A model generated the notes under the pieces. That model worked only from the letters and a program-made list of their open reading frames with translations. It did not search any database and had not been told where the DNA came from. Made by a program: the position numbers and the translations under genes. A DNA stretch of 64,000 nucleotides. Source: Setoptus koraiensis (lineage: Eukaryota; Animalia; Arthropoda). The stretch is from the NCBI GenBank assembly GCA_048013815.1, contig CM106585.1, positions 14,446,001-14,510,000 on the forward strand, written 5' to 3'. Below are positions 13,666 to 43,905 of this stretch, piece by piece (position 1 is the first letter of the stretch; each line of letters starts with the position of its first letter).

Positions 13666-16048
13666 TCAAAGCAGAAATTGGAGCACCAATATGATGCCAG
13701 ATATAACCCATCCTATGATCTACATGGACAAGAGAATAGAGCGATGAAATTCGAGAAGAGATGGTGCCGAATTGCCAAAATTGTAGTTACTAATATCTAT
13801 TCAGGTATCAAGATGACAAAGTACAAACAAGATTCACCCATGCGCTAACAATATTACTGAGCTCATCGATCAGGTAGCGACAGTGAGGATTGAGGACAAT
13901 CCAAGAATCACGGAAATCACTTTCACTCATCATGTTGCAACTATTTCAGTACTTACCGTCAACAAGTTTTCGTGAGTAACGGGGTAAACATACGCGATAA
14001 CGAATGCAGTACTGTCAGCATCGGCCAACAATTCCGATAATGACATCAATCGATTCAAGTTCCAGCTGCTCATGAGAGAATGGTGGACAATGAGACCCTG
14101 TAAAGCGTGATGGATTGCTTCAAACTGCATACCAGATTGACATGAGAGAGAAGTATAGCAATATTGAGAAATAAATCAGATTAGTCAAAGGTCCTGAGGT
14201 ATTGATGCCAAACTGATTGTCAATCAGTGATTGAGCGCGATTGGCACTGCTGAAAATAACTCACAGTCGCGCGCGAGTTGAGTCGAATGGCGACGTTCGT
14301 TATTCCAATCGACCACAAAACCTAAGCGCTCGATAAACTGAATCGGCCTACCCCCGAACACCTATCGGAACAAAAATATTCTCAATTAACTAAACATATA
14401 CCACGATTTATGCCGATGGCCCTAAATAAATTGGTTTTCAGCCAATCTGACCGAATTGCGGGGCGGTGTATCGATCGATGGGCAGTTATTGTTGCCGCAT
14501 CAATCTGTCACTTACCTTGGCGTGTACAAGGGCAGCACCGAAACAAAGGATGACAATCGGAGCCCATGTAAGAAGGAAAAGCATAAACATAATATGGAAT
14601 TGACCAATGTCCATGTCGGAATTTTTTATCATGGTGGCAAGCACCAAAGTGGTACACGTCAGCTTGAAGATGAGCTCTGAATGTATGTAGAAAGTGGAAA
14701 ATTCTTTCAATTCGTTCCATTCCGAACAGGTTGTCGTTATCATTTTAACGAGCGTATCTATTTTTCTTGATAAATCAATCGTGTCTGCTTCAACTGTTCC
14801 TTCATTCGTGGTATACCTTTGATTGTAGTACCTTCCATTGATGACTTTTCTGCGGTTCCAGTAGAGAATGACTAATCTTGACGCGAAATCTAAGGTATGC
14901 CTTGCCTTGTCGAAGCAGACCGCGGACCCAACAAAAAAATGGGATACTTCGAACGCTTGAAACACCAATTTCGTAAGGTTAAAAGTAAAATGCCACCACG
15001 CTAGATTACGTCGAGTGGCGCGATACTCTGACCATGACCTATGACATTGGTTGAATCCCCAAAGGAAAAACTGTGGTAGAACCGTAAATCCGGAATATGC
15101 AATGATCACACCACATCCTATACATAAGTTCGTGAATACTCTCGTGGTCGACAAATAGAGCCTATGCCCGGTTCCCATTTCGAGAAGTTCCTTCGGAAAA
15201 TTCAGCTGATAGTTGATTTCGTCAAAATCACTGTCGAAATCAAACAGCTTCTTGTCGCTACTCGTGGTCCCAGATGGACCTAGCTCTGTAAGTTCGCCTC
15301 TAAGATCATGATTACGCTGCAAGAGTGATGATATGCACTCACGCCCGCATTGATCAAATACATATGGATAACTATGACGGATATTATTCAACTCGACAGA
15401 CAGCTCGTACTTTTGTGGTTTAAGCAAACCGATTTCGGCACTTCCGTGTCTGCTGTCGGGAGTCAAGTTGATAGCGTTTTTCTGGTATTTTTTATCTCTC
15501 GACTTGACGACATTAGTTACACCAATCAGAAAGAGCCAACCTCTCAGAGTTAACTCTCGACTTCTTACATAGGTTGCCAAAGCTGAGATCGAGTTATTGA
15601 GTTTCTTGTAATTTTTAGAGCTCATTAGGCGCACCATGTCTTTTATACGGATAAGGTAAAGTGCAATTAATATTATGACTGTAACTTGGTTGAGCGTGCG
15701 AGAACATTCGAGGTTCAAATACATGTCATTCGTCCGAATTTTCTGCTCCATTCGGGATATAAGGCTCTTGCTTCCAAGACCGTATACCATTGAAGTTGAG
15801 AACGTGTATATTCCGAGACAGAGATCTAGCATCAGCCAGATTATGAAGACGTAATTTAGCCTCTTGATGGTGAGATATATATCAATTCGCGTCCGTATTT
15901 TATTTATGACGGACAAATTTTTCTCCTCCCGAAAAAGTTTTGCTATCTTTTCTTCTCTCTCTTGGTCTAACAAAAAATTCGCTCCATCGCCGATCCAGAA
16001 AACCAGCGTTACCATGGGCCAGTAGAGATTAAATTTGAATGAATCCAT
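13666..16048 (-). CDS. Gustatory-receptor-like 7TM protein, paralog A (584 aa)
   Basis: Exons 16048-14516, 14124-13957, 13719-13666; GT-AG, all phase 0. About seven hydrophobic segments. C-terminus ...AYVYPVTHENLLT|IIGWVISGIILVLQFLL* fits the GR/7TMIC TM7 pattern [TS]Yhhhhh-QF and the superfamily's C-terminal phase-0 introns. Confidence 0.8.
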
Positions 16049-18518: not shown

Positions 18519-18556
18519 CCAATCACACTCTTTTTGTCTCATTTTTTTTCGTCATT

Positions 18557-20728
18557 TTAAAGCATAAATTGGACTACTAGTATGATGCCTGATGCAAGCC
18601 ATCCCATGATCTACACGGAGGATATGATCAAACGGTGAGATAAGACAAGTGAAGGTGCCGAATTTTAAGAATTCTATATCGAGTTGCTAACCTCTATACA
18701 GGTGTGTGTATGACAGCGAAGAAAAAATCACTCAGATCCATGCATGTGAAATTTCACTAGCAACAGTGAGGATTGAGGCCGATCTAAATATCACGGAAAT
18801 TGACTTCGCTTTGATGTTTCACTCATTTCAGTACTTACCGACGGCAAGTTTCCGAGAGTAAGCGGGTAGACATAGGCGATAGTCAAAGCAGTATGTTCAG
18901 TGCGGCTCAGCACTTCCGATAATGACATCAATCGATTCAAGTTCCAGCTGCTCATGAGAGAATGGTGGACAATGAGACTATGTAAAGCGTGATGGATTGC
19001 TTCAAACTGCAGACCAAATTCACATGAGAGAGAAGTATAGCAGTGATCAGATTAGTTGCATCTTGAGGTATTGATATCAGAATGATCGAGCTTGAATATA
19101 TACCGTAATTGGCGGCGATGAGCCCGCAGAAAATTGGTTTCCGGCAATTGCCATCAGGTTGTTGAACAGTAGATCACCTGGATGGGCAGCCATTGCTACT
19201 CTGTACTTACCTTGGCGTGCACAAGAGCGGCACTGTAACAAATGAGGGTAATTGGACACCATAAAAGAAGGAAAATCCACGATATAACCAGAAATTGACC
19301 CTTGTCCATGTCGGAATGTTTCAACAAGGTGGCAAGTGTCAAAACGGTACACGGCAGCCTGATTAGAATCTCTGAATGTATGCGAGTGGTAGACCAATCT
19401 TTAAATTGGTTCCATTCTGAACGTGCTGTCGTTATCATTTTAATGAGCGTATCTGTTTTTCTGGATAAATAAATCGTGCTGGCGGCAACTTTTTCAGCAG
19501 TTATATTTTTGCAGTGTCTTTCATTGAATGCGTTTCTGCGACTCCGGTGAAGGCGTACTAATCCCGACGCAAAGTTTAAGGTATGCTTCGTCTTGGTAGA
19601 GCAGACCGCACATCCGAACGCGAAATTCATGGCTTCAAACAGTTGCAACCCCAGTCTCAAATAGGCGATTACGAAGTGCATAAATGCTGAAAAACGGTGA
19701 GTAATGAAGCTTCGCCGTAACCTATGACAGTTGTAGATTTCGTCTTGAAGAGTCAGTGCCCCCGCCAGGCTTCCGCCACCAACCAAGGCGCAAAAAAATC
19801 CTAGACATATGATTGTGTATGTCCTCATTCCAGACAAATCGAGTTTATGCTTGGTTCCCATACTGAGGAGTTCTTTCGGAAATTCCAGCTGATAGTTGAT
19901 TTCGTCAAAATCACTGTCGAAATCAAACAGCTTCTCATTATCCGTGGTTCTAGATACATCTAACTCTTTGAAGTAGACATGCTGATCAAGACTACACCTT
20001 AAGGGTGACAAAATACTTCTACGCCCGTATTGATCAGATGCATAAGCATAACTATGACGGATATAGTTCGAATCGGCAAGCAACTCGTACTTTTGTGGTT
20101 TGGGCACAAAAATTTTGGTACTTCCGAGCCTGCTGGATAGGATGCTGCTGCCAGCGTTCTTTCGGTATTTTTTATCTCTTGACTTGACGACATTAGTAAG
20201 ACCAAGAATAAAGAGCCAACCTCTCGGAGTAAGCTTGAGGCAACTCATATAGGTCGCCATAGCTGATATACTGTTATTGTACTTGTTGCAATTTTTAGGA
20301 CTCATTAGTTCTATTACGTCCTTTGCACGGATAATGTATTCTCCAATTATCATTATCACTGTAAGTTGGTGAAGTGTACGAGAGCATTTATAATTCAAAA
20401 ACATGTCATTCATTAAATTTTGTTTTTCCAATCTCAATCTTAAGCTTCCGCTGCCAAAACCGTATGCCATTGAAGTTGACAACGTGTATAACGCAATGCA
20501 GAGATCTAGCATCAGCCAGATTATGAAGACGTAATTTAGCCTCTTGATGGTGAGAAATATAACAAGTCGCGTCCGTATTCTATTTATCATAGATAAATTT
20601 TTCTCCTCTCGAAACAGGTTTATTATCTTTCGCACGTCTTCTTCTCCTAACAAGTAATTCGTTCCATTGCTAATCACAAATACTATCCATACCGTAAACT
20701 GGAACACATTTAATTTGACTGAATCCAT
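18557..20728 (-). CDS. Gustatory-receptor-like 7TM protein, paralog B (579 aa)
   Basis: Exons 20728-19211, 19006-18839, 18610-18557; ends IMGWLASGIILVVQFML*; clear homolog of A. Confidence 0.8.
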
Positions 20729-21880: not shown

Positions 21881-23993
21881 TCAAAACATGAGAGTGAGTA
21901 CTAATGCGATACCAGATACAACCCATCCTATGATCTACAAAAAGAATAGATTCGAAAGGTTAAGTTAGACAAGAGAAGGTGCCCAATTGCGAGATTCGTT
22001 GATAGGGTTGCTAATCTCCATTCAGGTGCCGAGATGACAAAGAGAAAAAGATTTACCTATTTGCAACATTATGTTCTACTCATTTCTGTACTTACCTTTA
22101 ACAAGTTTCCGAGAGTAACCGGGTGCACATATGCAATATGGAGTGCAGTATTTCGAGTATAACTCAACACTTCCGATATCGACAATAATCGATTCAAGTT
22201 CCATTTACTCATGAGAGAATGATGGCTGATGAGACGCTGTAAAGTATGATAGATAGCTTCAAACTGTAGCACAGATTTAGACCAGGAACAGGTGTAGAAA
22301 TGATCGAGAAATAAATCAGATTAGTCAAAGTCTCGGGGTCCTCAAAATTGCAATTGCACATGTTCGGCCTAAAATAGACCGAATGTTCAAGAATCGTCCG
22401 CCACTCTCGATAAAGTTCGGTTTGATTTATGGAGACAGACAACGAATTGCAAAATCTGAGCCTTCAAGGAGTAAACTAGGCCCACCTAAGGGGACACGGT
22501 TGTTTTCTCGAAAGTTGCCTCGAGAGCCTTCAAGAAATCGGTTGATTCAGATCAGGTTGCGAAGCCATAGATCGCCCGATTGGCAGTTATTGCTGTTGTA
22601 TCAGTATGTCCCTTACCTTGGTGTTTATGACGGCGGCACTGTAACAAAATATGATAATTGAACTCCATGAAAGACCGAAAAGCAACAACATAACAGTAAA
22701 TTGTAAATTGTTAATGTCAGAGTTCTTGATCATTGTGGCGAGTGTCAACACGGTACAAACCAATTTCGAGGCGAGTTCCAGATGTATGCGGGTACCAAAG
22801 AAATCTTTCAATTGGTTCCATTCCGAACAAGCCGTCGAGATCATTTTAATGAGCGTATCTGTTTTTGTGAATAAATCAATCGGCCTTGTTTCATCTGTTC
22901 CTTCATTCATACATGTAAAATATCTTTCAGTGTGAGACATCCCGCTGAATGCGTTTCTGCAGTTCCGGTGAAGGCGTATTAATCCTGACGCATAGTATAA
23001 GATATGCCTCGTCTTGGCATAGCAGATCTCGCATCCAATCACAAAACTCATTGCTTCAAACAGTTGCAACCCCAGTCTCACATAGGTGATCCAAAAGTGC
23101 ACATATGCTGAAAAACGTTGAGTGAAGAACCTTGGCCATGACCTATGACAGTTGTGGAATTCGTCTAGCAAAGTCAGTGTCACCAACAAGAGTCCGCCAC
23201 CGCCCAAGGAGTGACCTAATACCGCACTTATTCTTAAGAATATTCTCCAGGTGTATAAATCGAGTTTATGAGCGGTTCCCATACTGAGGAGTTCTTTCGG
23301 AAATTCCAGCTGATAGTTGATTTCGTCAAAATCACTGTCGAAATCAAACAGCTTCTCTTCGTTACTCGTGGTTTCAGATACAGCAATTCCGAGTCTGCTG
23401 GATAGAATGCTGCTGCTAGCGTTTCTCCAGTATTTTTTATCTCTTGACTTGACGACATCAGTAACACCAAGAATAAAGAACCAAGCTCTCGGAGTGATCT
23501 TGAGGCAACTCAAATAGGTCGCCGTAGCTGATATACTGTTATTGTGCTTCTTGCAATTTTTATAACTCAGTAGTCTCATTAGGTCCTTTGTACGGATAAA
23601 GTAATCTCCAAGTAGCAATATCACTGTAACTTGGTGAAGTGTGCGAGAGCATTTAAAATTCAAAAACATGTCATTCATTAAATTTTGTTTTTCCAATCTC
23701 AATCTTAAGCTTCCGCTACCAAAACCGTATACCATTGAAGTAAAGAAAGTGTATAACGCGATGCAGAAATCTAGCATCAGCCAGATTATGTAGACAAAGT
23801 TTAGTCTCTTAATTGTGAGAAATATAACAAGTCGCGTCCGTATTCTATTTATTATGGACAAATTTTTCTCCTCCCGGAACAGGTTTATTATCTTTTCTTC
23901 GTCCCTTTTTTTTAACAAGTAATTTGTCCCATTGTTGATCGTGTAGACTATCGATGTCGCAATCCGATACATATTTAATTTGAATGAATCCAT
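21881..23993 (-). CDS. Gustatory-receptor-like 7TM protein, paralog C (532 aa)
   Basis: Exons 23993-22617, 22263-22096, 21934-21881; ends IIGWVVSGIALVLTLMF*; in-frame loop deletion relative to A and B. Confidence 0.78.
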
Positions 23994-25253: not shown

Positions 25254-27408
25254 TTACACCGCAAATTGAAGTAACAGTATAATGCCAGATGTGACCCACC
25301 CAAAAAGCTGAAAAATTTTGATATAATGATGAAATTCAATAGTTAGTAGAATAGATGTTATGCATCGTTCAATCTTTCGCCCAAAAATTCTCTTACCGTC
25401 GGCAAGTTGCCAAGTGTCAACGGATATATGTGGCCAATAACAAAGGCGACATTGTTGATGTCACCTAAATCCTCCGAAACATACAGCAATTTTTGCAGGT
25501 TATGGCCACTCATGAGCGACTGATGGATAATTAAATTTTGCAGAGCGTAATGGATTGCTTTGAACTGTATTGTTGAAGCAAAGGATAAAGTAATGTATGA
25601 TCAAAGAAGAAGCACAGTTGGATCAGGTCAGTTGATAATTTAGCCTGGTTTTTGTAAAAGAAAAACTCAAAATCACCGCCCGGCACTCGTAAACAATTAA
25701 TTATTCGACATTGCTCGAGATACTCATTATTAATGCTCATTAATTAGAGTTATCGGAAGCGTTCATTAATTGGAAGTAATGTGCTATTTACCTTGCTGTG
25801 TATAATTGTGGCGACAAAGCTAACCACTACGATGGGAATCCAGTAAAATGAAGAAACTATTTGCACTGCTAGAAGTTGTAATTCCTCAATTTCGGTCATT
25901 TGCATGAGCGTTGCTACCGTAAAAATAAGACAGGGTGTCTTAAAGATTAGTTCCATATGCAAATAAAGAGTATAAGACCGCTTCATTTGATCCATATCAG
26001 AGCGTAACTCTAATATCATTCCAACAAGTCTTTCTATACTGTTTGATAGATCCACGAAACTTTTGTTTTGTTTTATGTTCGTTGCGCAGAATGAGTGGCG
26101 AATCTGACGATTCTTTTGTGATATTATATCAATTTTATTTATGGCAAGGGAGTTTCGTCCACGAACCGTCCCACGTCTGCCGAAATTTTTAGAGCTGCCA
26201 ACATCAAACGAGTTATATTTTCTAGCTCTTCTCACTCTTACAGGTATGATAGAAACCATCATCATGTCATTTGTTCGTTTTCTATGATTCCAGTGAAGAT
26301 GGATTACATGCGAGGCATAATCCAATGTATGTTTTCCCTTATTTTGTATGGCCACACAATCAACAATAAATTTGGCTATGTCTACCATTTGGAAAATAAA
26401 ATTGGCAGTGGTGCTAACAGACATCAAATAAGGAATTAAACGTTGCTTAGCGAATGAAAGATTTGAAATTTTGCAATAATTTACTTCAATCTGGTAAGAT
26501 ATTCTCCCGAGAACCACTGCTGCAATCAATACCAACAAAGTGCCAACAGTGGCTAAGTAGGACATTATTCTCATTGCAAATAAATCAACTTTGTGAGGTT
26601 TGCCATATTTAAGAAGCTGCTCCGAGAATTTGAGCTGATAGTTTATCTCACGGAATTCATCGTCAAAATTGAAAAGTTCCTTCTCATCGTTCTGAATACC
26701 TCTTGGATAATTTGGATCATATAAATTCTGCAGTTCTGTACCAACTACGCAATGTTTCGGATTAGATTCTTCACTTAGGCATTGTTCTTTTGGTGCAACT
26801 TCATCCGACTTCATGAGGTCACTTCGAGATGGACGAATCGACTCACCTTCGGGCACTTTGAGCATGTTCTTTCGGCATACCGTATCAGTGGCTCCCGCGA
26901 TATATAACCATGCTCGTAAAGTTAATTTGATTTCTATCATGTAAGTTGTTGTCCTGGCAATGAAGTCATCGTAGCGATGGCGTTCATTTAACGTTCTCTT
27001 AAGGTTTAGGAAACGAATCAAGTACGTCTCAAACAGCAATATTGCCATAATTTTATGTGTCATACGGGAGTATTCATACGGTGCATAAGCGTTAGTTATC
27101 AGGTTTTTCTGTTCCATAAACGAAATTTGGCTTTTGCTAGCGAAACCGTAGATTGCTGAACTAAATAATGAGTATAATGACACGGACGCATCAAATATCA
27201 TCCAGATTAGGTAGGTGTAATTTTGCCGTCTTATTTCCAGTAATAACTCTATCTGATATCGAATTCTACTTATTGCTGTCTTCTTTCTATACAAAAACTG
27301 CATTTTTTTCTTGAATTCGTCATAATCGAATAGAAGATTCGTTGAACCGTTGATGAGCAAACAAATATAAAGAATATGTAGAAATACATTGAATTTTGGT
27401 GAATCCAT
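25254..27408 (-). CDS. Gustatory-receptor-like 7TM protein, paralog D (612 aa)
   Basis: ATG at 27408 (MDSPKFN, homologous to the other starts). Exons 27408-25792, 25564-25397, 25307-25254; ends LFGWVTSGIILLLQFAV*. Confidence 0.8.
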
Positions 27409-27997
27409 TCTATAGTTCGACAGTGATAACTGATGGAATTTTCTCACAGTTTTCTAATCAGATCAAACTTATCTGATTACTATAAATTATCTGAATATTC
27501 TAATTGGAAAGTTCCGATGGAACGATCGTGAACTTGTGCAGCAAATTAAACTGGCCAAAAGTTTCTCTAAGCAACATAGGTGCACTGTTTACAACCAATT
27601 GACCGACCATTTTCATCTTTATACTTTCATTGTATCACGCAAATTTTATTATTTGATATCAACTACGTTCAGGATGCACGCCATGATGCCTTTGGTGAAT
27701 ACTTTTTTTGTATTCTCGAACCATGCACGAACATCAGTTTACTTTTCCTAACCCTTTAAAACTTCTATCGCTGATTGGGAGTCACCCTTTAACAAGATCA
27801 TAAAAAATTAGATTAGAAAGCCAGAGGAACCTGACAAGAACAAAATTCAGTTTAAATCTAAAACCAATTTTGTTGTGGCATGCTTGCCTAATCAGAATGG
27901 TGTAATTTCCTTTATTCCTAATTCGCACAATATCGAGGTGTCCTCAGTTCAAAGAAACAATTGATCAGTCATGTTTACGCAGGTATAAACTGGGATT

Positions 27998-28037: not shown

Positions 28038-28361
28038 CAGGGAGAAAGATCCCTTAAACACCACCGGTCTAGCATGTCAAGGATATTTACATTTTCTCTT
28101 GCTTTGTTTTTTCTTTTGGTACTAAGTATTTACCATTAGTGTTTCTTTCATTAGTTGGAATTTCAAGCACGAACAAGTTATGATTAATGATTACGTTCTC
28201 GGAACTCATTTCCTATAGCACACGTGCTTGAATTAAAATTATCATATATGAATAAATTATATTCTTAGTCTATTTTAAAGCCGTACAACTACGGCGTACG
28301 ATTGCCAGTATCAAACTGCGACAAAGACATATGAACTCATGTCACGCATTCATTCAATATT

Positions 28362-30353
28362 TCATAATGCAAACTGAAGCAACAATATTATGCCTGATAT
28401 GATCCATCCAATAATCTGTAGAAAGTATTGTAACGTAATGAGAGGGGAAATTTTAGACAGTGACAGATAAAATAAAAGCCAGCTCCCTGTCGAACTCTGT
28501 CCTCATGATACTTACCACGGGCAAGTTCCCGAGTGTCAATGGATATAAATGTCCGATAACAAAAGCGATATTCTTGTCAGAGGTCAAATCCTCTGACACG
28601 ACCATCAATTGTCGCATGTTACCTTTGCTTATGAGTGATTGGTGCCGCATTAAATATTGGAGTACGTGATTTAAGGCGACAAACTGGAAAGAGATGTGAA
28701 ACGTATAAAAGATATGAGAAAATCGATAAAAATTCCATTGCAATAACAATCAATAAATGCACGAGATTAGATAATTTGTACTTATGTAATATTTTAGATT
28801 CTTACCTTGGCATGGATAAGGGCGGCACTGTAACTGACCACTGCAAGAGGAATGCAGTAGCCCGTAAACATGCATTGTGCAACTTCAAGTTGAAGCTTGT
28901 CCAGGTCTTTCAATTTGGTGAGGGCGGCAATCGTCAGCATAACACAGGGCATTCGGATTATGAGTTGCATATGCAAATCGAAGGTGTGAGAACTCTTCAA
29001 TTGATCCAAGTTCGTGCGCGATTCGATTATCATTCTAATCAATCTATCAATTTTATTTTTGTATAACTTAATCAAATTTCGCCTCCTTGTTTCTGTTGCT
29101 TCATGGTTGCCGATAGCAACAACGGAAGCAGGAAAGTGAGCATAATAACGTGTGCCAATCGTGCCGATTTTAGAGCTTCCGTTTCTGGTGCATTGCGAGC
29201 AAAGTTGGATTATCTGTGAGGCGAAAATCACTGTATATTTTACCCTCAAATGGCAGACCAAACAATCCACGATGAATTTCGAAAGATTTATGGACATGGC
29301 TACATTGCAGAAAATGACTACGATCATCAATAAATACGCAAAAAGACGCTCATTGAGAAATAATTCTAATGAGTTCTCACAATATTTGAGCTCAATCGAT
29401 AGAGAAGCATATGCAAACAATGCCGCCACGATAAATGTGAGCAATGAAAAACAGATAGTACTATAGCACAACATTCGCATTGTCACTAGGTCCACTTTAT
29501 GAGGAGTGCCGGTCCTGGCGAGTTCTATCGGAAAATCGAGCTGATAGTTGATCTCACGGAAGTCATCTTCGAAATTGAACAATCCTACGTTGTCTGTGCT
29601 TTCCGAATCGTTTTGATGCGAACTCGTGCCTCCTCGGCAGTGCACAACAGGATGGCGATTTCTTGTGTTTTCCTTAAAATTTATATAGGCACTTGATCTT
29701 TTTCTACCCAGTGGATTTGTGGTCAGAAATTGAGGCGCACTCATTTCGGGATTAGTAGAACAAGTGGCGTTTTTATGGTGTGCTCTGTCACGACAGCGAA
29801 CGGCATTGGTGAGACCCATAATATAAAGCCAAGCTCTTAAAGTTAAATTGAGGTTCACCATGTAAGTCCCCATTTCGGCAGTAAGGTCGTTTTGCTTTCT
29901 AGCAACAATAGTATTTCTTGCGTTTCTCAAACGGACACCGTAAGTCTCTATCATAAGTAGTGCAGAAACTTTGTTGATTGTGCGAGAGTATCCGTAAAAT
30001 AGAAAGTAGTCACTGGTCCAAATCATCTGCTCCATTCGCGAAATAAGACTCTGGCTACCGAACCCGTATAATAATTGGTGAAACAGTAAGTAGAGTCCGA
30101 CAGAGAAATCTATTATCATCCAAATCAAATAGACACGTCTATGTCGTCTGATTTTGAGGCATGAATCCAGTCGATCCGTCGTCCAGTGCCAAAAGTTACG
30201 CTCGGACTCATTCTCATGGTGTGGTACTGAGTTTTTTTCATCATCTTCAACCAGGAAATACCCAGAATTATTGATGAATGTCACAGTAAAAATCAAATGA
30301 CGAAATATATTAAATTTCACTGAATCCATCGTGTTCACTGTTGTTTCAACCAT
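28362..30353 (-). CDS. Gustatory-receptor-like 7TM protein, paralog E (589 aa; 581 aa from the homologous Met at 30329)
   Basis: Exons 30353-28806, 28683-28516, 28415-28362; ends IIGWIISGIILLLQFAL*. Confidence 0.8.
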
Positions 30354-31358: not shown

Positions 31359-31699
31359 AGTGTCTGGCCCATAAGAATAAATTATTCTTCATCACGCACC
31401 ATTCGTTAAATCGGGATTGTCAGCGATAAGTATGTGACAGGTCTGAGAACTCGGCCTGCGGTCCCGTAGTTGGAGGCCGTCACATCTCCGTCGTCGCTGG
31501 AGCGACGACTGCGTGTGACGGGAACCCTTCGGGCAGGGTTGATGGGCGCTTCGGGTTTTGGGTTTCGGGCCTCGCTCTCAGCCATCCGCTTACATGACTG
31601 CAATCCAAACACAGCTGCAGTGATAAAATGAGAGAAACAGACATGGATACAGGGTGTTGCGCTCACCGCGACCGCACAGGGCCCGGCCACACTCTTTTT
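31359..31699 (+). ncRNA. Candidate structured Pol III ncRNA, RNase P/MRP RNA-like (about 340 nt)
   Basis: GC-rich island with a bulged terminal helix 31359-31370/31679-31693 followed by CTTTTT. AGGTCTGAGA-N4-GGCC at 31439-31456 resembles CR-I/P4-P7 of nuclear RNase P RNA. Many nested helices and CUUCGG motifs. P3 and CR-V are not canonical. Confidence 0.5.
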
Positions 31700-31721
31700 G
31701 TGCGTCGAACAGCGATATCGA

Positions 31722-31960
31722 GGCAACCGGAAGTGGTAGAAGATTAATTTTGATTTCATCGTGCTTCGCTAGGTGTCATCTACCCGAATATGAATTTTCA
31801 GAGCTCTATCTCAATCTTTTAGTAACTCCGGAACCGGAAGTTTCCTGGCTTCCGGTCTACTCATTCCATGATGTTGGGCCCCTACGGGACTCATGTGTGA
31901 AGTTTCAGCGAAGTCTGAGTGGGGACCTAATCGCTAGAACACCCAGAAAAGAATCGCAAA
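31722..31960. mobile_element. Possible degenerate DNA-transposon/MITE fragment
   Basis: ACCGGAAGT twice and an inverted CTTCCGGT within about 130 bp, a style of motif seen in arthropod non-autonomous repeats; no termini identified. Confidence 0.25.
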
Positions 31961-32063
31961 TAAGACATTCAGAGTGGAAATTTCATCCAACCATTTGAGA
32001 AAAAAGCTGAGCATCATGATTAGACATTTATTGTAGAAGAAGAGGATAACAGAAATTGTTATG

Positions 32064-35029
32064 TTATGAGGGAAAGATCTGAGGCCTGATTTTTGGGCCC
32101 ATCTTGCTTAGTTTTGTATCAATAGGTTGATTGGTGTCGTAGAGACCAGGGGCCTGGAAAACTAGAAATGCTGTGCCAGCGACACAAACTACACTAAATA
32201 CCATTAGGAAGAAACGATCAATCATAGTGGCAACATATCTCCAGTGCTCTTCCACCTGAGCATGATGAAGGGATTGAAAAGAATGAGAAAGATCGATAAT
32301 AGTAAGTTTTGAATTGAAATTGATTGAGATATTGAGATTGAATTGTTTAATTTTCGTACCTTGTTATAGTTTTCTCTATTTTCCATGCGCTTCGCAACAA
32401 AATCCAGACTCAAAAAGGCATTGGCCACTTCTGTTTGATGACCGCACAATGATATCTCCTCTGTAGGATAGTTGTCATGATCGCATTCTAAAATAGTTTC
32501 AATCTGAGGCTCGGCGCTCGAATCGCGATATCGATCGTCTTTTCTGCGCATATCCTTTCTCATTTGACCACAACAAACTTCGTGATTAGTGTGACATCTT
32601 TCGCAGGGACACTTCAGTGGCGAATCACAAATCAATTGACAAGTGTTTCTGTGCAAAGGGGTCCGGTTGTTTGTCGAAGATTGACGATGACCGTTGTTGT
32701 GGCAACTATTGTGTTGTGAATCATGACGACGGCATATAAAATTATTAGTACTACTACTAAGACTGGGTTTTGTTTGCCAATTATGATTGTCTGATTGATT
32801 CCAAGTGGCCTCGTGGTAGCCCTCATCTTCGGCATCAGTGTTGTTTCTCAATATTTGCTGTTGCGGCCTGTTAGAAAAATAATCATGCCTGTTGGATTGC
32901 CGATGATTGTCTCTCAACGTATGACAATTGGTACATCTGACTAATTTCAATTGCTGTTGCTGATGATTTTCGTGATGGTGGTGCCTATGGCGTCTGGCCA
33001 AAGAGTTAGTACGGCCACCCTTGTGACATTGGTCGCATGTTTTCAGCTTCATGGAGCTCATCTCTTCGATTTTTTGATCGTTGTCCCTCTGGCCCATCAA
33101 CGATATAACTGGCAATACCTTCATATAAAACCACCTTTCAAACCGTGACATTTTGTGCGTGGAAGAGGTCCGAAAGCTTATATTGAGAACAAATATTGTT
33201 GCGCCCACCGATAGTGTAACCAAGAATAACGTGAATAGTAAATACTGGCCAAGTAAAGGCACAGTAAATGAGGTAGGCGGTATGATCTCAATAAGACACA
33301 GAAGAAACACGTCAACCGAGACCACAATAGAAATACTCAGCGAGATCTGTCATGTTATGTTATCCGAATGATGTACAAAGGATGAGATGGAATAATGGTG
33401 CAATTAGTGAATTAATTGTGTTAGCTCGTGCAAATGAGTTAAGTTGCTGCTAGACGGTGACACGTAAAACTTTTCATTACACATAACTCACCTTCTCGTT
33501 ACTGTCAGATGGGAGATAGAACACCAGAATAGATAGTAAGGACATGACGATGCACGGTATAATGAGATTGACCGTGTAGAAAAGAGTCTTCCTCCTCAAT
33601 AATATATTGAAAGTTATGTCTGATTGATGACGAGAGTTTCCATTCCAACAATCCGATTAGATAAAACAATATTCAAGATGATAATTTAAGAGTCAATCCA
33701 TGGTCGAACTTGAGAGCTTCACAAATGACAAGTGATCGATAAAAAATGCGTGATTGCTAATCAAGAACTCACCTGTAAATGCACCCAAGCAACAAGTGTA
33801 AGACTTCTCTTTTCTGGTGGCTGGCACCGCCATGACATCCCATTCGACGCTCAATAGAAACTCGCTTAGATCTATGCCAATTTCAATGACATCGGAGTAG
33901 TTAGATGAATTTGTGTCGGGTTGGTTGATGTGTCGTAGATCGATCTGTGTCACGACGTTCGGATTGTTTTAGCATCACATATGAGCAGGAGAATCGGAAT
34001 GGAAACAATCCGACTACTATTAAAAACTTTTTCTGAAACGACAAATGAAATTGACCACCAAATCAAATCGAAGTTTAGTTCACCTACCTGATTGCCTGTC
34101 CATGTCCAAGTGCTATGATTACATTCATTGAAACAAAACACATATGATATAGTATACAACATGATACAATGTACAATATGTCGCATCAGATGAAGCTATA
34201 GAATATCGCTTATTACTTACCCGAATTTGAGTATACAATTCTGCTGATCGAAGGGAAAATACGATACATCAATGTGGCAAGAGCTTTTGTAAACTGCCGG
34301 GGGTTTCCAAATGACGCGCCCGTCATGGTGTAAAGTAGCCTTAGTTAGAATAGTGACCTCGTACTGACCATCGGCACTACGTGTAAGACAAAAATGTGCG
34401 TTGATGATTAATTGATGATGTGTGTGGATTGAATGTTGAATTGATTAATCGAAAATGAAATAGTTACGCAATAATCAACTTACTTATTGTACAACACCAA
34501 ATCAGGCAACCAGATATTGTCGGCGGGTACATGGAGCTACGCATACACAGCATCGAAACAAAACGTAAACCAATAGGCGTGAAGATACTATTACAATATG
34601 GTCGAACAACTATTGATGCAAGATAATAGTGATAACAACGGAAAAGATGAACTCACCTTGGTTAGACCGCCATACTCATCTGGGTCCCACTTGAGCTTGT
34701 AATCTGTCCACTCTTGTTCCACCCAGACAATGGTGGTCATCATTTGATAGCGGAGATTCTGTGTGTTGGGCATGCAATTGGTTAATGTTGAGCCTGATAA
34801 AGTTAGATAAGTGAATTGGTAATTGCAAAATTTGCCTACTGACCACATCGATTAGCTGGGACAATTTGATGCCCATTTTAAGCACTAGAACATCGCTATT
34901 GTTTCCAACTGGCCGCACGAATCTATTGTATGACGTCATTAGGTCCTCGTAGAGACGCTTTGCGTCGTTGTTGGCCTCGGCCGATTGAGCGAGGATATTG
35001 GCGATTAAGTAAAGCATCCATAGCAGCAT
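32064..35029 (-). CDS. Nicotinic acetylcholine receptor alpha subunit (666 aa, 9 exons; insect alpha1-4/alpha8-like group)
   Basis: Exons 35029-34844, 34758-34657, 34536-34484, 34376-34221, 34112-34088, 33944-33773, 33619-33492, 33346-32360, 32255-32064 join in frame (2001 nt). Signal peptide, [21 protein letters not shown], Cys-loop [15 protein letters not shown], loop C YTCC, loop F insert LRH...IGIDL, four TM segments. Confidence 0.96.
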
Positions 35030-36164
35030 GTTGAATGTTGTGCACTGCGTTCTGGCAATTACTAACCATTATAAATAAATATTTTTTTTTTCTAGTAACC
35101 GAGCCATTAAATTGATGCTAACCAATAGCTAACCCACTCGTTATTGGGTTAGTTTACTGAGGCTCCGCAGAACTGCAGGATAAGGCAAAGCTGCAGAGCA
35201 AAGCACAGCACAGATTTGTGGCACAGACTGAGGGCACAAAAACTCGCACAGATTATGCATCAACAAAATACAACTAGGTTATCACTGGAATAACATTTCT
35301 GGAAGTATAATATAGTAAATAAATAAATTCTGATATCATGATATTCTTGAGATTAGGCCCGGATACCCTTTAATAAAATATCACAAACCATATATCATAG
35401 TCGCCAGCATAAAAACATATTACGGTTACATAACAACAACACCAACAACAATAACTATTATTATTTATTTACAACAACAATACGTTTGCATCATGCAACG
35501 AACGGTTTGGTTTTACACACCGAGACAATAGTTTCATTTGAATTCAATATTGGTATTCTACATGTCTACCAGCCACTATAACTGTGTCCGTCACATCAAT
35601 CGACTTATATGATATTATATCTTTTTGCATCTGCCCAACAATCTTCTGAAATAAATCAGGAATTGAAGCAGCAATTAAGATTCCACAGGAACGATATCAC
35701 TAAATCCTTTATATTACGCTAATAAGCTGCCTGGTAACATATAATCAAATTATGATATTATCAATACTTTAATGTTGTTGTTGTTGATTTTGATTGTTAT
35801 ATAATGATGGTATATCTTTTCGTAATTAGCTCATTATAAATAACTAAATACAACCAATCAACAGTCCAGCGGATTCCTGTCGACCCATCTATTTCACAGA
35901 ATAATATTTCATCAAGCCTACGACTTAACCACCAATCAAAACATACCTCTCTACTCATTCCACCGCCCATCAATGAATGAATTAGGCCCGATATTAGCAA
36001 CATCCGATAACTGCGCAATCAATTGAACGTTCGGACTTATCAATATATTGAACAAAATCAACCTCTGCTGACCGATTCAATTACTATTTATTATCGAACC
36101 AGCCTAATAGCATTAGTAAAACATTAGTGAGTGAAAGCAAGCTGATTTTCTTTTGCATATTAGA

Positions 36165-37217
36165 ATGGATATTAAGAAGCACAGACAACAAAGAGAACGA
36201 CACTCTGAGAATTCGGATGTGCCTGTCGCTGACGTGGCCGCAATACCATCTGTCAGTAATCAACTATCTATCTACGGTAATGACTCCATTAATCAACAAT
36301 CCACTAATCAACTATCGGCTGTAGCCCTCTTCCAAACACAAACACAAGCCCAGTTACCCACAACAGCCAAACCACATCCATCACAACAGGATCTTACCGC
36401 ATTGTTTGAATGTCCAGTTTGTTTCGACTATGTTGTGCCTCCGATACTTCAATGTCAAAATGGCCATTTAGTGTGTCAGCCATGTAGAACAAAAATGTCA
36501 TATTCAACATGCCCAACATGTCGTGTGTCTATAGGATCATTGCCATCTATCAGAAACCTTCAATTGGAGCGACTAGCATCGACGCTTTTTTTTCCATGCA
36601 AACATAGTAGTACTGGTTGCACAGTTAAACTATCTTGTACAAATAAACTTGATCATGAGGACTCCTGTAAATACAAACCGTATCCATGTCCTTGCCCCGG
36701 AACTTCCTGTAACTGGGTTGGACAACTCGATCAAGTTATGGCACATCTAACTAACCAACATAAGAGTATAACAACCTTAAATGGTGAGGATATTGTTTTT
36801 CTAGCCACAGATATAAATCTTAACGGGGCTGTTGATTGGGTCATGATCCAATCTTGCTTCAATCAACACTTTTTACTTGTTCTTGAGAAGCAGGAACGCA
36901 ATAATAGACATCAATTTTTTGCCGTCGTACAACTGATAGGATCTCACAGACAAGCAGAAAAATACAATTATAAACTAGAACTAAATGGACACAGGAAGAG
37001 ACTTCAATGGGAGGCAACACCGCGATCAATTTTAGACGGAGTACAAAGTGCAATCTCTTCATGCGATTGTCTTGTATTCGATGCCCAAATGGCTCAGCAT
37101 TTTCTCTCTCCTATCCAAAAAGAAGGCGCTAACCTGGGAATTAATGTGACAATTACTAAACTAAACGATAGGCCAGAAATAATGTCGACCAATGAATCAG
37201 CTACAAAACACCCATAA
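36165..37217 (+). CDS. sina: Seven-in-absentia/Siah RING E3 ubiquitin ligase (350 aa, single coding exon)
   Basis: RING FECPVCFDYVVPPILQCQNGHLVC...CPTCR, zinc fingers, substrate-binding domain (VDWVMIQSCF, RLQWEATPRSI, LGINVTI). ATG at 36165. Confidence 0.97.
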   Translation: MDIKKHRQQRERHSENSDVPVADVAAIPSVSNQLSIYGNDSINQQSTNQLSAVALFQTQTQAQLPTTAKPHPSQQDLTALFECPVCFDYVVPPILQCQNGHLVCQPCRTKMSYSTCPTCRVSIGSLPSIRNLQLERLASTLFFPCKHSSTGCTVKLSCTNKLDHEDSCKYKPYPCPCPGTSCNWVGQLDQVMAHLTNQHKSITTLNGEDIVFLATDINLNGAVDWVMIQSCFNQHFLLVLEKQERNNRHQFFAVVQLIGSHRQAEKYNYKLELNGHRKRLQWEATPRSILDGVQSAISSCDCLVFDAQMAQHFLSPIQKEGANLGINVTITKLNDRPEIMSTNESATKHP

Positions 37218-37784: not shown

Positions 37785-38930
37785 TCAGAGATCTTTGGGC
37801 CAGGCCCCGGGTGCATGATTTGCAAGTCGCCTCATTCGCCGAGTATTACGATCCTGATCGCGTATTTTCTTTTCCATTTCAGCATCAGTGAGTGTCTCGA
37901 GAGAGGGAGCGAACTGGTCAGTATCGTTGTTGTTTCTGAATGGGAAATCTAAGGCCGGTAAGTGAGCCTCGCTAAATGCATAAGTTTTTTGATGCCAAGA
38001 AATCTGACCTCGAATGGAGTAGGCTATGGCGGTGACAAATTCTCCACCCAATCCTAGTTCAGAGCATAGTTTCAGTGCAAACTCCTCGGGCGTGTTGTGT
38101 TTCTCGCTGAGATCCCATTCAAATTGATCAACGAGAGATATGTTGCCTACGTGAACATTTAATTTTATTAACACTCTCTGATCGGTCTGTTGATCTAGAA
38201 TGGTCTCTGTGGGGAACGCTTCGATTTGTTGTCTAATCGACTGAGCAATCGCTGGTTGAAATGCTTGCGGAGGCAAGTCCAAATCGTCACACAATATCTC
38301 AGCAAACTGTTCTGGGGTAATTGAAATTTCATTCTTGTTCCAAACGAACGTGTCTCTAAGTTTATGTCCTTCGACTTCCATATCTAATCTGATGGGTACA
38401 AGAACTTCTTTAACATTAGATATTTGATGTAGGGTAGCCGGATCTAGGTCGTCGTATACTAATGGATATGAGCGAATTCTTTTTTGTGTTAGTCTGGTGG
38501 ACGCTCTTGCAATTGCGGTGGAACATGGTACTGCATCTAAGTGGTGAGATGATGTAGATAAAACTGGAGTTGATAGTTGCCAATTGATTCGTTTGTTTGA
38601 TTTGGGCTCGCGTTCCGTTCTAGAAATTGTCGGCTCGGATGTAATGGACATTGCCTTGTAGCGTTCATCTTTGCCCTGGAAGATTTCATCGACTTCACTG
38701 GCTTTTAATAGAGTGACATTAGTTACAATTGTATGTGCCGCATAACCCTGTTGTGTGATTTTCTTTCGTTCGTCCACCGACACCATACGTCTCCAGAGTG
38801 AGGGATACTTTTTATAAAGGGAGCCCCTGAACATACGCAAATAGTTGCCTACATGTGATCCAATGTAGTACTTCTCGCCTCCCTCCTCCAATTGGAATGG
38901 CGACGGTCTATCTCCGAATGTTCTCATCAT
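37785..38930 (-). CDS. SMARCB1: SWI/SNF subunit SNF5/SMARCB1 (Snr1), 381 aa, intronless
   Basis: [23 protein letters not shown]-terminus, RPT1 [25 protein letters not shown]2 DQFEWDL, C-terminal [20 protein letters not shown]. Confidence 0.98.
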
Positions 38931-40108: not shown

Positions 40109-42636
40109 ATGGACTCTATCAAGGTGAATATGTTCAAAATTTCACTTTTTATTTGGTCGACAATCATTTTATCAAGTTATTTCTATCCATATAATTGGCA
40201 CGAAGAAGGCGATGAAGAGGAAAAAATTGAAGCCAAAAACAAAGATTACGATGATAAAGACATAACCGCAGTAAAAAAGTCGCCCAGTTGCTGGTCGCTG
40301 TCTAGACTGACACGTAATGGAGCCAGAATCGGAGCAGCAGTGGCAAGTGTTAATATTGACGCAATTAGTGTAGGTAGATCAGATGAAACAATTGAGCACA
40401 AGAAGCCAACACAAGAGGCCCCTGAGAGGACAAGTTGCGAGGAAACGTCAATTCTAGCTAAGTGTCAGCGCAGAGTTGAGCTGCTTTTGAAATCACGTCA
40501 CCAGAGTGGTCTATATTTAATATATTTAGCATTTGATTATTTTGTAGCTTTCAATGTGATAATACGTTTTTTCATATTCGCCTTCTTAGATGAAGCGACA
40601 CTGTCATGGATTACACAGAACGATATAGTGGGCGATCCACTGAAACTCCACGGCCATTCGCCAACTTTCTCAAAGGTGGCGCTGATGCTGGTCCTCAGTA
40701 CATATATCATGCGTTCGGTACGCTTAGTGAACATGCTAAACTTTAGTGTGAATCCTCAGTATGATTACGACGACGAACCCTCGGAGGGACTGGTCTACTT
40801 GTCGAGCCTCATTCTGACTCCAAGAGCGTGGCTATTTGTGCTGGGTCTAGTGAGCCGAGTTGCATCTCGCGATGGTGCAACGAAAAGGGCATCGGTCCAG
40901 CAGAAAGAGGCGACATCGCGACAAGACGAACGAAACGAAAATAACAAAAGTAAAAATAACAATAGTGACAACAGGCCGAAACATTGGAAATTATCATTTC
41001 AATCGTTGGAAATGACCACAACTGATGGTGCGTCAAGCAAGCCAAATGATGATACACAACTGAGGGAATTTTCCGCTCACTACCAGCAGCATTTGGCCGA
41101 GCATGCAAATGAGGTCCGGCGGGCCTGTTTCGATTCGTCAAATTTGCAAGAGAACGACATAGGTAACAGCGAATTAGACAACTATGTTTGTCATCGACAC
41201 AACCGCAGCGAATTGTCTTCGAGTAGCTACCATGGTGTTTTGTTCGACTATGAACAAGATTTCAGCGAAATCAATTATCAAATCAAGTTCCCCAAAAGCC
41301 TCTATCTTCATGGCAACTCGCCGCATAGATTAGACTTGGTCACGTTGCGAGCTATGGCCTATTTGTACATTTTTGCAATATTTGTAATCGTTGTGTCATT
41401 TATCTATATAGCGATTATTAGTGTGCATGTGGAGTGGCAATATTGCGACTATTCGCTGGCAAGATTTTTAAGCAAGCGCTCAGTGCCCTGCTTGTTTGTT
41501 TTAGTAACATTAATATCGGTTCTGTTTCAACATTTCGACATGTTTTATTTTTCGTTTGCATGTTTAATTCACTTTGCCAAGGCCAGATACACCGCGAGAC
41601 ATGTAAAAAAGACAATAGCTTTGTGTAAGTTGTACCACATGCGACTGTCCAACAACATTACCGGAAATCATGTTGTAATAGACAGATCAAGCGGCAAAGA
41701 CAGAAGATCAGAATTTTCATCAGCGCCATTGAGTTCATCGGACACTCAGGAAAGACTCTATTACATGTCGATAGAGCTGATAGTGAACATTGACAAGCTA
41801 GTTCACATGATAATAAAACTGCGCAAGGATCTAGATCAAATGAAACTGCGATTTTTCACTTATTTGCATTTCGAGCTGTTGACAAAATCAGTTTGTACCA
41901 CGCTGTCGCTGGCCGCATTTGCCAGGTCAAAGCCATCGGATTATCCCGGCTTCGAAGTGATCACTATGTCCGCGATAGGCTACACGATGCCCATAGTTGT
42001 GCTCATGCTGTTCGCGGCACTAATCGAGCAGCAGGTGAGTATATCGGCGAACGGGTTATCGTTGATTAAATTTGATACGAAATTTTCGCAAATCTCATCA
42101 ATCTCATCGCATCGATTATCGGTCACATTCCATTGATGAACTTGCACTCTCTGAACTGTTTGTTGAAATAAGTTCAAAAAAATCTATCACAGCCTGCAGA
42201 TACTGATGGCGTTCAATTCGATGATGAGCAGCCGCGATGTGAGGCGCCTAATGAGCATCTCAACTGATTTGGGCGACACGGACAACATTGCCTTCATTGT
42301 GGCGAGCAAGTTTTCGCTGACCATGGGCTCGGTTCCGCCGGTAAGTGCCAGCGAACAGTCCGCATAATAGCAGGCGAATAATCCGCATTCAATCCATGCT
42401 GATCAATGCCAATCAATGCCGGAAGCTATCCCTCAATATGCCAAGTTTTTAATTAACCGCTTCATTTAATAATTAACCGGTTCATTTAATAATTAACCGG
42501 TTCATTTAGTAATTAACAGGTTCATTGACTAATTAAGCGAAAATAAACTAATCGGTCTTGTTTGTTGCTCTGTCTGTCACAGATTCTCGCCTGGATCGCA
42601 ACGGGAGTGGTCCTATTATTGCAGTTCGTGCTCTGA
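40109..42636 (+). CDS. Gustatory-receptor-like 7TM protein, paralog F (715 aa)
   Basis: Exons 40109-42034, 42173-42340 (168 nt, AAG acceptor), 42583-42636 (54 nt); ends ILAWIATGVVLLLQFVL*. Shares the MDS start, LTPRAWLF and LFDYEQDFSEINYQI with A-E. Confidence 0.78.
42450..42540. repeat. 20-bp tandem repeat (AATTAACCGGTTCATTTAAT) x4-5 in intron 2 of paralog F
   Basis: Read directly; two units contain the palindrome AACCGGTT. Confidence 0.85.

Positions 42637-43874: not shown

Positions 43875-43905
<31 letters not shown>

What the first reader, a model, noticed from the sequence alone, without database searches (positions are those of the whole stretch)
13666..42636. Six-member family of very long, divergent gustatory-receptor-like channels with an invariant 3-exon plan
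Seen: six intact genes (584, 579, 532, 612, 589 and 715 aa) whose last two exons are exactly 168 and 54 nt with phase-0 introns; the ORF track shows only their truncated exon 1. Established: the arthropod GR/OR (7TMIC) superfamily has a TM7 [TS]Yhhhhh-QF motif and conserved C-terminal phase-0 introns, and typical GRs are about 350-450 aa. Inference: this is a lineage-specific chemoreceptor or ion-channel expansion with large cytosolic insertions that automated annotation would probably leave as hypothetical proteins. If the organism is an eriophyoid mite, a group reported to have a very reduced GR repertoire, an active local expansion is notable.
Basis: partly seen in the sequence, partly recalled or inferred. 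Interest (0 to 1): 0.75.

Follow-up and report, generated by a model that had tools for sequence, protein, structure and literature searches.

The report
Hidden oversized taste-receptor-like gene family
Six neighbouring genes in what is probably a tiny plant-feeding (eriophyoid) mite encode unusually long, fast-evolving membrane proteins that no sequence search recognises, yet their predicted fold, last-intron position and pore motif mark them as distant insect-type taste-receptor channels from a family of at least 50 genes, so these mites probably have far more chemoreceptors than the published count of two for a related species.

Summary
Six intact three-exon genes lie at 13666-42636. Each has a long first exon, then exons of exactly 168 and 54 nt, with GT-AG phase-0 introns. 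Predicted lengths are 584, 579, 532, 612, 589 (581 from the conserved start) and 715 aa.

- Pfam, a word-index search and profile comparisons find no named relative.
- The last intron lies six codons before an [S/T]-G-h5-Q-[F/Y] motif, the ancestral Gr intron position.

The genome holds at least 56 such genes. It is probably Setoptus koraiensis. Only genes 1-3 are a recent local triplication; genes 4 and 5 each pair with a protein from unnamed assemblies of other DNA.

The extra length is mainly a cytosolic loop between helices 2 and 3, which carries a strongly conserved acidic-aromatic motif. Channel and sensory function are inferred.

The scan has already flagged similar GR-like clusters elsewhere in this genome (s1-338090, s1-359719).

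The parts
14516..16048 (-). gene 1, exon 1 (511 codons; helices S0-S6 and the long intracellular loop 1)
   Evidence: ORF and phase-0 GTAAGT donor. AF2 model of this exon: pLDDT 76; top 8 PDB matches all OR/Orco/GR.
13957..14124 (-). gene 1, exon 2 (168 nt; cytosolic end of S6, loop 3, S7a)
   Evidence: AG...GT open segment. Finds 56 paralogous exons in the genome. Colinear with the contiguous C-termini of intronless homologs.
13666..13719 (-). gene 1, exon 3 (54 nt with stop; S7b pore helix: six codons, then S-G-h5-Q-F)
19211..20728 (-). gene 2, exon 1 (506 codons)
18839..19006 (-). gene 2, exon 2 (168 nt)
18557..18610 (-). gene 2, exon 3 (54 nt; S-G-h5-Q-F)
22617..23993 (-). gene 3, exon 1 (459 codons; shortest loop 1)
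22096..22263 (-). gene 3, exon 2 (168 nt)
21881..21934 (-). gene 3, exon 3 (54 nt; the Q-F pair is replaced by T-L, the only degenerate motif of the six)
25792..27408 (-). gene 4, exon 1 (539 codons from the conserved M-D-S start; long loop 2)
25397..25564 (-). gene 4, exon 2 (168 nt)
25254..25307 (-). gene 4, exon 3 (54 nt; S-G-h5-Q-F)
28806..30329 (-). gene 5, exon 1 (508 codons from the conserved M-D-S start; an in-frame ATG at 30353 would add 8 codons)
28516..28683 (-). gene 5, exon 2 (168 nt)
28362..28415 (-). gene 5, exon 3 (54 nt; S-G-h5-Q-F)
40109..42034 (+). gene 6, exon 1 (642 codons; about 100 extra residues before S1; separated from genes 1-5 by three unrelated genes and on the other strand)
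   Evidence: long branch in the tree
42173..42340 (+). gene 6, exon 2 (168 nt)
42583..42636 (+). gene 6, exon 3 (54 nt; T-G-h5-Q-F)

Best explanation
The six genes belong to a large family (at least 56 loci in this genome) of extremely divergent gustatory-receptor-like proteins of the seven-transmembrane ion-channel (7TMIC) superfamily.

Shown:
- The three-exon gene plan.
- Paralogy across the genome.
- A predicted 7TMIC fold: S0-S6 directly for gene 1, and S7a/S7b through an intronless homolog whose C-terminus is colinear with exons 2-3.
- An inside-positive topology with long inner and very short outer loops.

Inferred by analogy with BmGr9, Gr43a and Orco:
- Subunits assemble as tetramers through the cytosolic anchor formed by the long S4-S6 extensions and S7a.
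- S7b lines a central cation pore.
- The Q-[F/Y] pair forms the outer gate.
- Ligands bind in the pocket between the outer halves of S2-S6, where S3 and S4 are the least conserved helices.
- The proteins act as chemoreceptors in the mite's few sensory neurons.

The extra 150-300 residues are cytosolic. They comprise a loop of about 155 residues between S2 and S3, holding a disordered variable stretch followed by a strongly conserved acidic-aromatic motif (LFDFDDDFREINYQLKFP...G.PH..D). There is also a variable S4-S5 loop and, in gene 6, an N-terminal insertion. I infer that the conserved loop motif is a docking or regulatory element facing the anchor domain.

Genes 1-3 arose by recent local triplication. 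Genes 4, 5 and 6 are older lineages.
For: Gene plan.

Family size and clustering: 56 exon-2 places; 77 exon-1 pieces.

Fold:
- Exon 1 of gene 1, folded with 34 paralogs: pLDDT 76, pTM 0.72.
- A profile search of 1.84 billion proteins found 42 relatives. Several are intronless and carry a C-terminus colinear with exons 2-3.
- P0024, folded full-length: pLDDT 85, pTM 0.85.
- Foldseek ranks 1-23 are all OR/GR/Orco at probability 0.96-1.00.

[quoted passage not shown] Exon 3 here is six codons plus the motif.

Motif roles in BmGr9: PMC11100771.

Motif conservation over 30 paralogs: S/T in 28, G in 30, Q in 26, F/Y in 29.

Topology: inner loops total 282 residues at 16.8% K+R; outer loops total 32 residues at 8.9% K+R.

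Protein language-model neighbours carry 7tm_7, Trehalose_recp or DUF267, and none of the listed ones 7tm_6.

Constraint: intact ORFs; dN/dS 0.56-0.60 at dS 0.36-0.52 for genes 1-3.

History: tree.
Against: - No sequence-level link to any named GR. Pfam 7tm_7, Trehalose_recp and 7tm_6 give nothing at E<=10 on exon 1, on exon 2 or on full-length homologs.
- Profile searches of PDB sequences give nothing.
- hhalign against this genome's own weakly 7tm_7-like lineage gives probability below 1%.
- The Tyr of the TY pair contacts the pore-penetrating lipid in BmGr9 and is Tyr in 81% of GRs. It is Gly in all members here.
- The window proteins could not be folded full-length, so S7 is inferred through a homolog that is about 15% identical.
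- There is no expression, localisation or channel evidence.
- dN/dS near 0.6 shows weak constraint, and gene 3 has lost the Q-F pair.
- The structural scores do not separate GR from OR.
Confidence: 0.78

Rival explanations
1. The proteins have the 7TMIC fold but are not chemoreceptors. They would be channels or scaffolds with an internal role (developmental, metabolic or organellar), as proposed for some non-arthropod GRLs and for PHTF. The conserved cytosolic loop motif would bind a conserved intracellular partner.
For: The most conserved element of exon 1 is cytosolic: the loop-1 motif has a mean top-residue frequency of 0.70, against 0.42-0.44 for S3 and S4. PHTF proteins also combine a 7TMIC core with a very long loop 1 and an N-terminal extension (PMC9998090). 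There are no expression data.
Against: Fifty-plus tandemly arrayed, fast-diverging paralogs with lineage-specific bursts are the signature of environmental-response receptor families, not of housekeeping proteins. The helices that line the ligand pocket in solved ORs and GRs vary most, while the pore and anchor are conserved. The GR-type motif and intron are present.
Confidence: 0.13
2. The family is a 7TMIC lineage that does not descend from arthropod Grs. It would be, for example, an expanded PHTF-like or ancient GRL-like branch, with the intron and motif similarity coincidental.
For: No profile-level similarity to the genome's own 7tm_7-like genes. The long loop 1 resembles PHTF. The top structural hits are ORs rather than GRs, by 1-3 Z units.
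Against: A phase-0 intron exactly six codons before an [S/T]-x-h5-Q-[F/Y] motif at the extreme C-terminus would be a coincidence of roughly 1 in 900 for two introns placed at random over about 600 codons and three phases. PHTF1-2_N does not match any of the six proteins at E<=10. Language-model neighbours are 7tm_7, Trehalose_recp or DUF267 clusters. PHTF is reported as largely single-copy and conserved, not expanded.
Confidence: 0.06
3. The fold match is only a generic long-helix bundle resemblance, or the genes are decaying relics, so there is no functional receptor family.
Against: All eight 7TMIC clusters, and only those, occupy ranks 1-8 in two independent models, covering about 90% of the targets, and the score then drops by 6-11 Z units. 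Six of six ORFs of 1.4-1.9 kb are intact. The start codon, splice sites and exon lengths are conserved across 33 paralogs. dN/dS is below 1. Counterparts exist in other DNA.
Confidence: 0.03

Closest known systems
Arthropod gustatory receptors (Pfam 7tm_7 / Trehalose_recp; solved examples BmGr9, DmGr43a, DmGr64a)
   Same: Predicted seven-helix 7TMIC fold with S0 and a split S7a/S7b. Long cytosolic extensions of S4-S6. Short outer and long inner loops. The protein ends 2 residues after the motif. [quoted passage not shown] S/T, five hydrophobic residues and Q-[F/Y] conserved. Tandem arrays with lineage-specific bursts.
   Different: 1.3-1.8 times longer (532-715 aa against about 350-450). No HMM or profile similarity. 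The motif Tyr is replaced by an invariant Gly. Loop 1 is about 155 residues and carries a conserved acidic-aromatic motif. Only two of the three ancestral C-terminal introns are present.
Cryptic Drosophila Grl proteins found by structural screening (Benton and Himmel 2023, PMC9998090)
   Different: Those are single genes of ordinary length in an insect that has many canonical Grs. This is a family of more than 50 genes in a chelicerate with almost no canonical Grs, and the proteins carry large cytosolic additions.
Tetranychus urticae GR clades A and B (Ngoc et al. 2016, PMC5203786)
   Same: Acariform mite. Massive tandem expansions. Only 8.9% hit 7tm_7. Compact genes with one to three short phase-0 C-terminal introns, the last one in TM7.
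   Different: The spider-mite GRs were found by iterative BLAST from known GRs, which failed for eriophyoids (PMC7738191). The TYhhhhhQF motif is mostly unrecognisable there but clear here. Whether the two families are directly related was not tested.
PHTF proteins (candidate vertebrate and eukaryote-wide 7TMICs)
   Same: A 7TMIC core with a very long first intracellular loop and an N-terminal extension.
   Different: PHTF has a conserved N-terminal Pfam domain, which was not found here. It is reported as conserved and low-copy. No GR-type intron or motif is reported for it.

Membership tests
GR/GRL branch of the 7TMIC superfamily | Seven TM helices, intracellular N-terminus, intracellular loops longer than extracellular ones | tested here: met
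   Helix order from the AF2 models. Inner loops total 282 residues with 16.8% K+R; outer loops total 32 residues with 8.9%. No dedicated topology predictor was available.
GR/GRL branch of the 7TMIC superfamily | [quoted passage not shown] | tested here: met
   All six genes and 30 of 33 modelled paralogs have a final exon of six codons + motif + two codons + stop. The position is as stated in PMC2680840.
GR/GRL branch of the 7TMIC superfamily | [quoted passage not shown] | tested here: inconclusive
   Two phase-0 introns are present. The first lies in the cytosolic end of S6, 56 codons upstream of the last. Its equivalence to ancestral intron 1 or 2 needs an alignment with annotated Gr gene structures, which these tools do not hold.
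GR/GRL branch of the 7TMIC superfamily | TM7 motif TYhhhhhQF | tested here: inconclusive
   S/T in 28 of 30, five hydrophobic positions, Q in 26 of 30 and F/Y in 29 of 30 are kept. Y is G in 30 of 30. Gene 3 has T-L in place of Q-F. Variant motifs are accepted for Gr36, Gr59 and Grl36a.
GR/GRL branch of the 7TMIC superfamily | Match to Pfam 7tm_7 / Trehalose_recp, or sequence homology to known GRs | tested here: not met
   No Pfam match at E<=10. hhalign against this genome's 7tm_7-like lineage gives probability below 1%. The PDB sequence search is empty. Only language-model features point to 7tm_7 clusters. In T. urticae, 91% of accepted GRs also fail this test.
GR/GRL branch of the 7TMIC superfamily | Tetrameric ligand-gated cation channel expressed in chemosensory neurons | not testable with these tools
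   Needs expression data, electrophysiology or a multimer prediction of the spliced proteins.
Insect odorant receptors (7tm_6) | 7tm_6 profile match; restricted to insects; partnered with Orco | tested here: not met
   No 7tm_6 match. The host is a mite. OR chains score slightly above GR chains in Z, but within 1-3 units.
PHTF | PHTF1-2_N domain with a long loop 1 | tested here: not met
   No PF12129 match in the six proteins at E<=10. The whole-genome scan for PF12129 found nothing, but its controls were also silent, so it is uninformative. A long loop 1 is present (about 155 residues, against more than 300 in PHTF).

The most novel reading that the evidence does not exclude
Eriophyoid mites are held up as animals that have almost lost chemoreceptors. 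They may instead run chemosensation on a hidden GR-derived family that makes up about 1% of their genes. That family has a re-engineered channel: the lipid-contacting Tyr of the pore motif is replaced by Gly throughout, and a conserved acidic-aromatic module has been added in intracellular loop 1. The module would give the channel a second, cytosolic input, for example a docking site for a partner or a regulatory plug on the anchor domain. The distant, partly intronless relatives found only in unnamed assemblies would then mark a wider, undescribed GR-like clade.
Probability: 0.3. Interest if true: 0.78.

Novelty: new variant of a known kind. Interest (0 to 1): 0.63.

Why it matters
Published work on the eriophyoid Aculops lycopersici reports only two GRs. 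It interprets this as loss of chemosensation linked to miniaturisation and host specialisation (PMC7738191). A family of 50 or more GR-like genes that BLAST and HMM searches cannot see would overturn that inference for at least one eriophyoid. Relatives 37-57% identical turn up in DNA from other, unnamed sources, so the family probably extends to other species.

It would also supply candidate receptors for host finding in a group of crop pests and virus vectors. It extends structure-plus-intron detection of cryptic 7TMICs from Drosophila to chelicerates.

Finally, it offers a natural variant of the GR pore motif (Tyr to Gly) and a conserved cytosolic loop module. Both could be tested against the recent GR structures.

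Tried and rejected
- Pfam on all six first exons, all six second exons, a read-through ORF and ten distant homologs: nothing.
- Word-index protein search with exon 1 of gene 1: no hits. With the 54-sequence alignment: only two unnamed proteins.
- PDB sequence-profile searches: only chance-level rhodopsin and coiled-coil hits.
- Foldseek on the exon-1 model: not significant, though the OR28 and BmGr9 rows had the highest probabilities.
- hhalign of the family profile against the two weak 7tm_7 loci of this genome, and against an 8-sequence alignment of one of them: no relation.
- PF12129 (PHTF) scan of the genome: silent, controls silent, uninformative.
- Paralogs with lost introns, sought so that a full-length member of this genome could be folded by reference. 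The apparent exon 1-2 fusions (L003-L005) are in-frame, stop-free retained introns, not intron losses.
- Spliced (joined) proteins were not given to any search or folding tool. Exons were searched one by one by reference, and exon 3 (17 residues) is too short for the family scanner. Exons were joined only inside local scripts, for lengths, hydropathy, dN/dS and a display alignment of C-termini.
- Rejected readings: insect-type OR, PHTF member, pseudogene array, chance helical bundle.
Full report
THE OBSERVATION

The region holds long ORFs on the minus strand (14486-16048, 19196-20728, 22587-23993, 25750-27447, 28794-30353) and one on the plus strand (40109-42136). A script searched downstream of each ORF for open AG...GT and AG...stop segments. 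It recovered in every case a phase-0 donor at ...HAK|GTAAG (gene 6...EQQ|GTGAG), one 168-nt exon and one 54-nt terminal exon ending in ...G-h5-Q-F plus two residues.

Gene 5 is 581 aa from the family-conserved M-D-S start. Introns are 89-391 nt.

THE WIDER FAMILY

Exon 2 of gene 1 finds 56 places in the window's genome (48,755,295 bases in two contigs). They cluster on both contigs, and exactly six fall in this window.

I fetched 20 further stretches and modelled the genes there. Exon 2 is 168 nt in 33 of 33 and exon 3 is 54 nt in 30 of 33 (the exceptions are 51, 60 and 66 nt). Exon 1 varies from 459 to 642 codons, and pairwise identity to gene 1 is mostly 24-31%. The invariant plan is therefore a property of the whole family and reflects constraint.

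THE ORGANISM

The neighbouring genes are animal genes: a Cys-loop receptor transmembrane region, Sina and SNF5. Earlier scan notes call the organism a mite.

The published chromosome-level assembly of the eriophyoid Setoptus koraiensis has two chromosomes and an N50 of 24.53 Mb (PMC11920263). That equals the larger contig here (24,533,333 bases). I take the genome to be that species, probably. This is an inference from the assembly statistics, not a sequence match.

SEQUENCE SEARCHES

- Pfam gives nothing for the first exons at E<=10 apart from chance rows, and nothing for the second exons.
- The word-index search finds nothing.
- A profile of 34 first exons (A1) searched against 1.84 billion representative proteins finds 42 proteins.
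- Twelve of these are close relatives. One of them, P0002, is at best 57% identical to anything in this genome, so it comes from other DNA.
- About 25 are distant full-length relatives (E from 1e-16 to 7e-4).
- The ten looked up come from unnamed Logan, JGI or ENA assemblies. The ten scanned against Pfam have no match.

FOLD

Exon 1 of gene 1, folded with A1, gives pLDDT 76 and pTM 0.72. It has two very long helices (341-406 and 416-475) and a disordered stretch at 196-264.

- Foldseek was not significant on this model.

The tools do not take spliced proteins, so S7 had to be tested through a homolog. Several distant relatives are intronless. Their C-termini align colinearly with the end of exon 1, exon 2 and exon 3 of the window genes.

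- One of them, P0024 (640 aa), folded with a 54-sequence alignment at pLDDT 85 and pTM 0.85.
- Foldseek ranks 1-23 were all OR/GR/Orco at probability 0.96-1.00.

GR-SPECIFIC MARKS

- Exon 3 here is six codons, then [S/T]-G-h5-Q-[F/Y], then two codons and the stop.
- Over 30 paralogs, S/T occurs in 28, G in 30, Q in 26 and F/Y in 29.
- In BmGr9 the Thr forms a hydrophilic ring, the Tyr contacts a pore-penetrating lipid, the middle hydrophobic residue is a gate, and Q and F swap at the outer gate (PMC11100771).
- The gating pair and the polar ring are thus kept here, while the lipid-contacting Tyr is replaced throughout.
- Inner loops total 282 residues with 16.8% K+R. Outer loops total 32 residues with 8.9%.
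- Language-model neighbours of both gene 1 and P0024 are clusters carrying 7tm_7, Trehalose_recp or DUF267, or are unnamed. I treat this as a lead only.

WHAT FAILS

There is no sequence-level link to GRs.

- The genome has only two weak 7tm_7 loci (24 bits, below the cut-off). This echoes the two GRs reported for Aculops lycopersici (PMC7738191).
- One of these loci has relatives that reach 7tm_7 only at E 1.5e-4, in 2 of 8 members.
- hhalign between that lineage and this family gives probability below 1%.
- Of the criteria listed for GR membership in PMC5203786, the family meets topology and the last intron. It meets the TM7 motif in variant form. It fails the HMM criterion, as 91% of accepted spider-mite GRs also do.

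ANATOMY OF THE EXTRA LENGTH

Counting helices back from the C-terminus in gene 1:
- S6 is 481-511 and continues into exon 2.
- S5 is 416-475.
- S4 is 341-406.
- S3 is 299-337.
- S2 is 116-142.
- S1 is 64-91.
- A hydrophobic S0 and charged helices lie before S1.

The main addition is intracellular loop 1 (about 143-298). It holds a variable disordered stretch and then the best-conserved element of exon 1, LFDFDDDFREINYQLKFP...G.PH..D (mean top-residue frequency 0.70; invariant F, E, I, H). Loop 2 varies in length and is long in genes 4 and 6. Gene 6 has about 100 extra residues before S1.

S3 and the membrane part of S4 are the least conserved helices (0.42-0.44). S5, exon 2 and exon 3 are the most conserved (0.60-0.69). 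This pattern fits a variable ligand pocket combined with a conserved pore and anchor.

HISTORY

- dN/dS among genes 1-3 is 0.56-0.60 at dS 0.36-0.52. Other pairs are saturated.
- A quick IQ-TREE of 46 first exons gives (gene 4, P0005) support 97, (P0007, (gene 1, (gene 2, gene 3))) support 99 and 100, and (gene 5, P0011) support 100. Gene 6 sits on a long branch.
- Left out of the tree: L004 (a duplicate of L003) and two ORFs without a recognisable donor.
- Only genes 1-3 are therefore a recent local triplication.
- A 17-gene clade on the other contig is the larger lineage-specific burst.

COMPARISON AND NOVELTY

The closest known things are arthropod Grs, the cryptic Drosophila Grls found by structure (PMC9998090) and the divergent spider-mite GR clades (PMC5203786). 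PHTF shares the long loop 1, but no PHTF domain is found here.

I found no paper that mentions both 7TMICs and mites. The S. koraiensis genome paper (PMC11920263) has no chemoreceptor section and annotated the genome without RNA-seq.

The scan has already flagged GR-like clusters elsewhere in this genome: s1-338090 and s1-359719. I fetched the first of these. It holds four ORFs of 533-546 aa with the same architecture, but only a weak, colinear profile match to this family (E 0.026). It is likely a second cryptic subfamily.

VERDICT

This is a new, architecturally modified variant of a known superfamily. Function remains inferred.

Noticed in passing
window 43510-51278: Immediately after gene 6 lies a 7.8-kb tract made almost only of T (about 78%) and A (about 21%), with G+C near 1%. 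There is no clean repeat unit: Tandem Repeats Finder reports periods of 15, 93 and 282 at 69% matches. The cause is unknown. It could be an assembly artefact of long-read data, or a real T-rich satellite.
   Followed up: partly
G000:C1:14674262-14689195 (L027 1262-2902, 7126-8748; L028 2986-4587, 6591-8195): Four ORFs of 533-546 aa lie 164 kb downstream. They share the architecture of this family: an N-terminal F-x-[IV]-F...N-x-S motif, long helices, and an exon 1 that ends in phase 0 at ...Q/E-K|GT. The profile match to this family is weak but colinear (E 0.026). They are probably a second cryptic GR-like subfamily, flagged earlier as s1-338090.
   Followed up: partly
L003, L004, L005 (G000:C2:11902500-11907500, C1:11489000-11494000, C2:14984000-14989000): Three near-identical copies of a family member lie on different chromosome regions. 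At two of them the same ORF of 267-300 aa with no Pfam match sits alongside, which suggests recent segmental or transposon-mediated copying. In these copies intron 1 (120 nt) is in frame and stop-free, so the ORF reads through exon 1, the intron and exon 2.
   Followed up: partly
L001 (G000:C2:8509530-8513141) and L002 (G000:C1:17960826-17964326): These are the only two places in the genome that approach Pfam 7tm_7 (24 bits, below the cut-off). Both are long intronless ORFs (680 and 651 aa). L002 ends in T-F-S-V-M-I-I-Q-L. Its relatives in unnamed assemblies are 696-950 aa, so the more canonical GRs of this lineage are oversized too.
   Followed up: partly
window 31406-33325 (-), 36153-37217 (+), 37785-38930 (-): Three unrelated genes separate genes 1-5 from gene 6. 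The first is a Cys-loop receptor transmembrane-region exon with a His/Gln/Asn-rich cytosolic loop. The others are a Sina E3 ligase and SNF5/INI1.
   Followed up: partly
L006 (G000:C1:14244000-14249000), about positions 1200-1900: A run of N interrupts a family member in the cluster at C1:14.24-14.26 Mb. It is either an assembly gap or a withheld stretch.
   Followed up: no
family-wide, intron 1 donors (e.g. L008, L009, L011, L012): Many paralogs on contig 2 use GTGATC or GTAATC as the first-intron donor, where the window genes have GTAAGT or GTGAGT. This is a weak-looking donor conserved within a clade.
   Followed up: no
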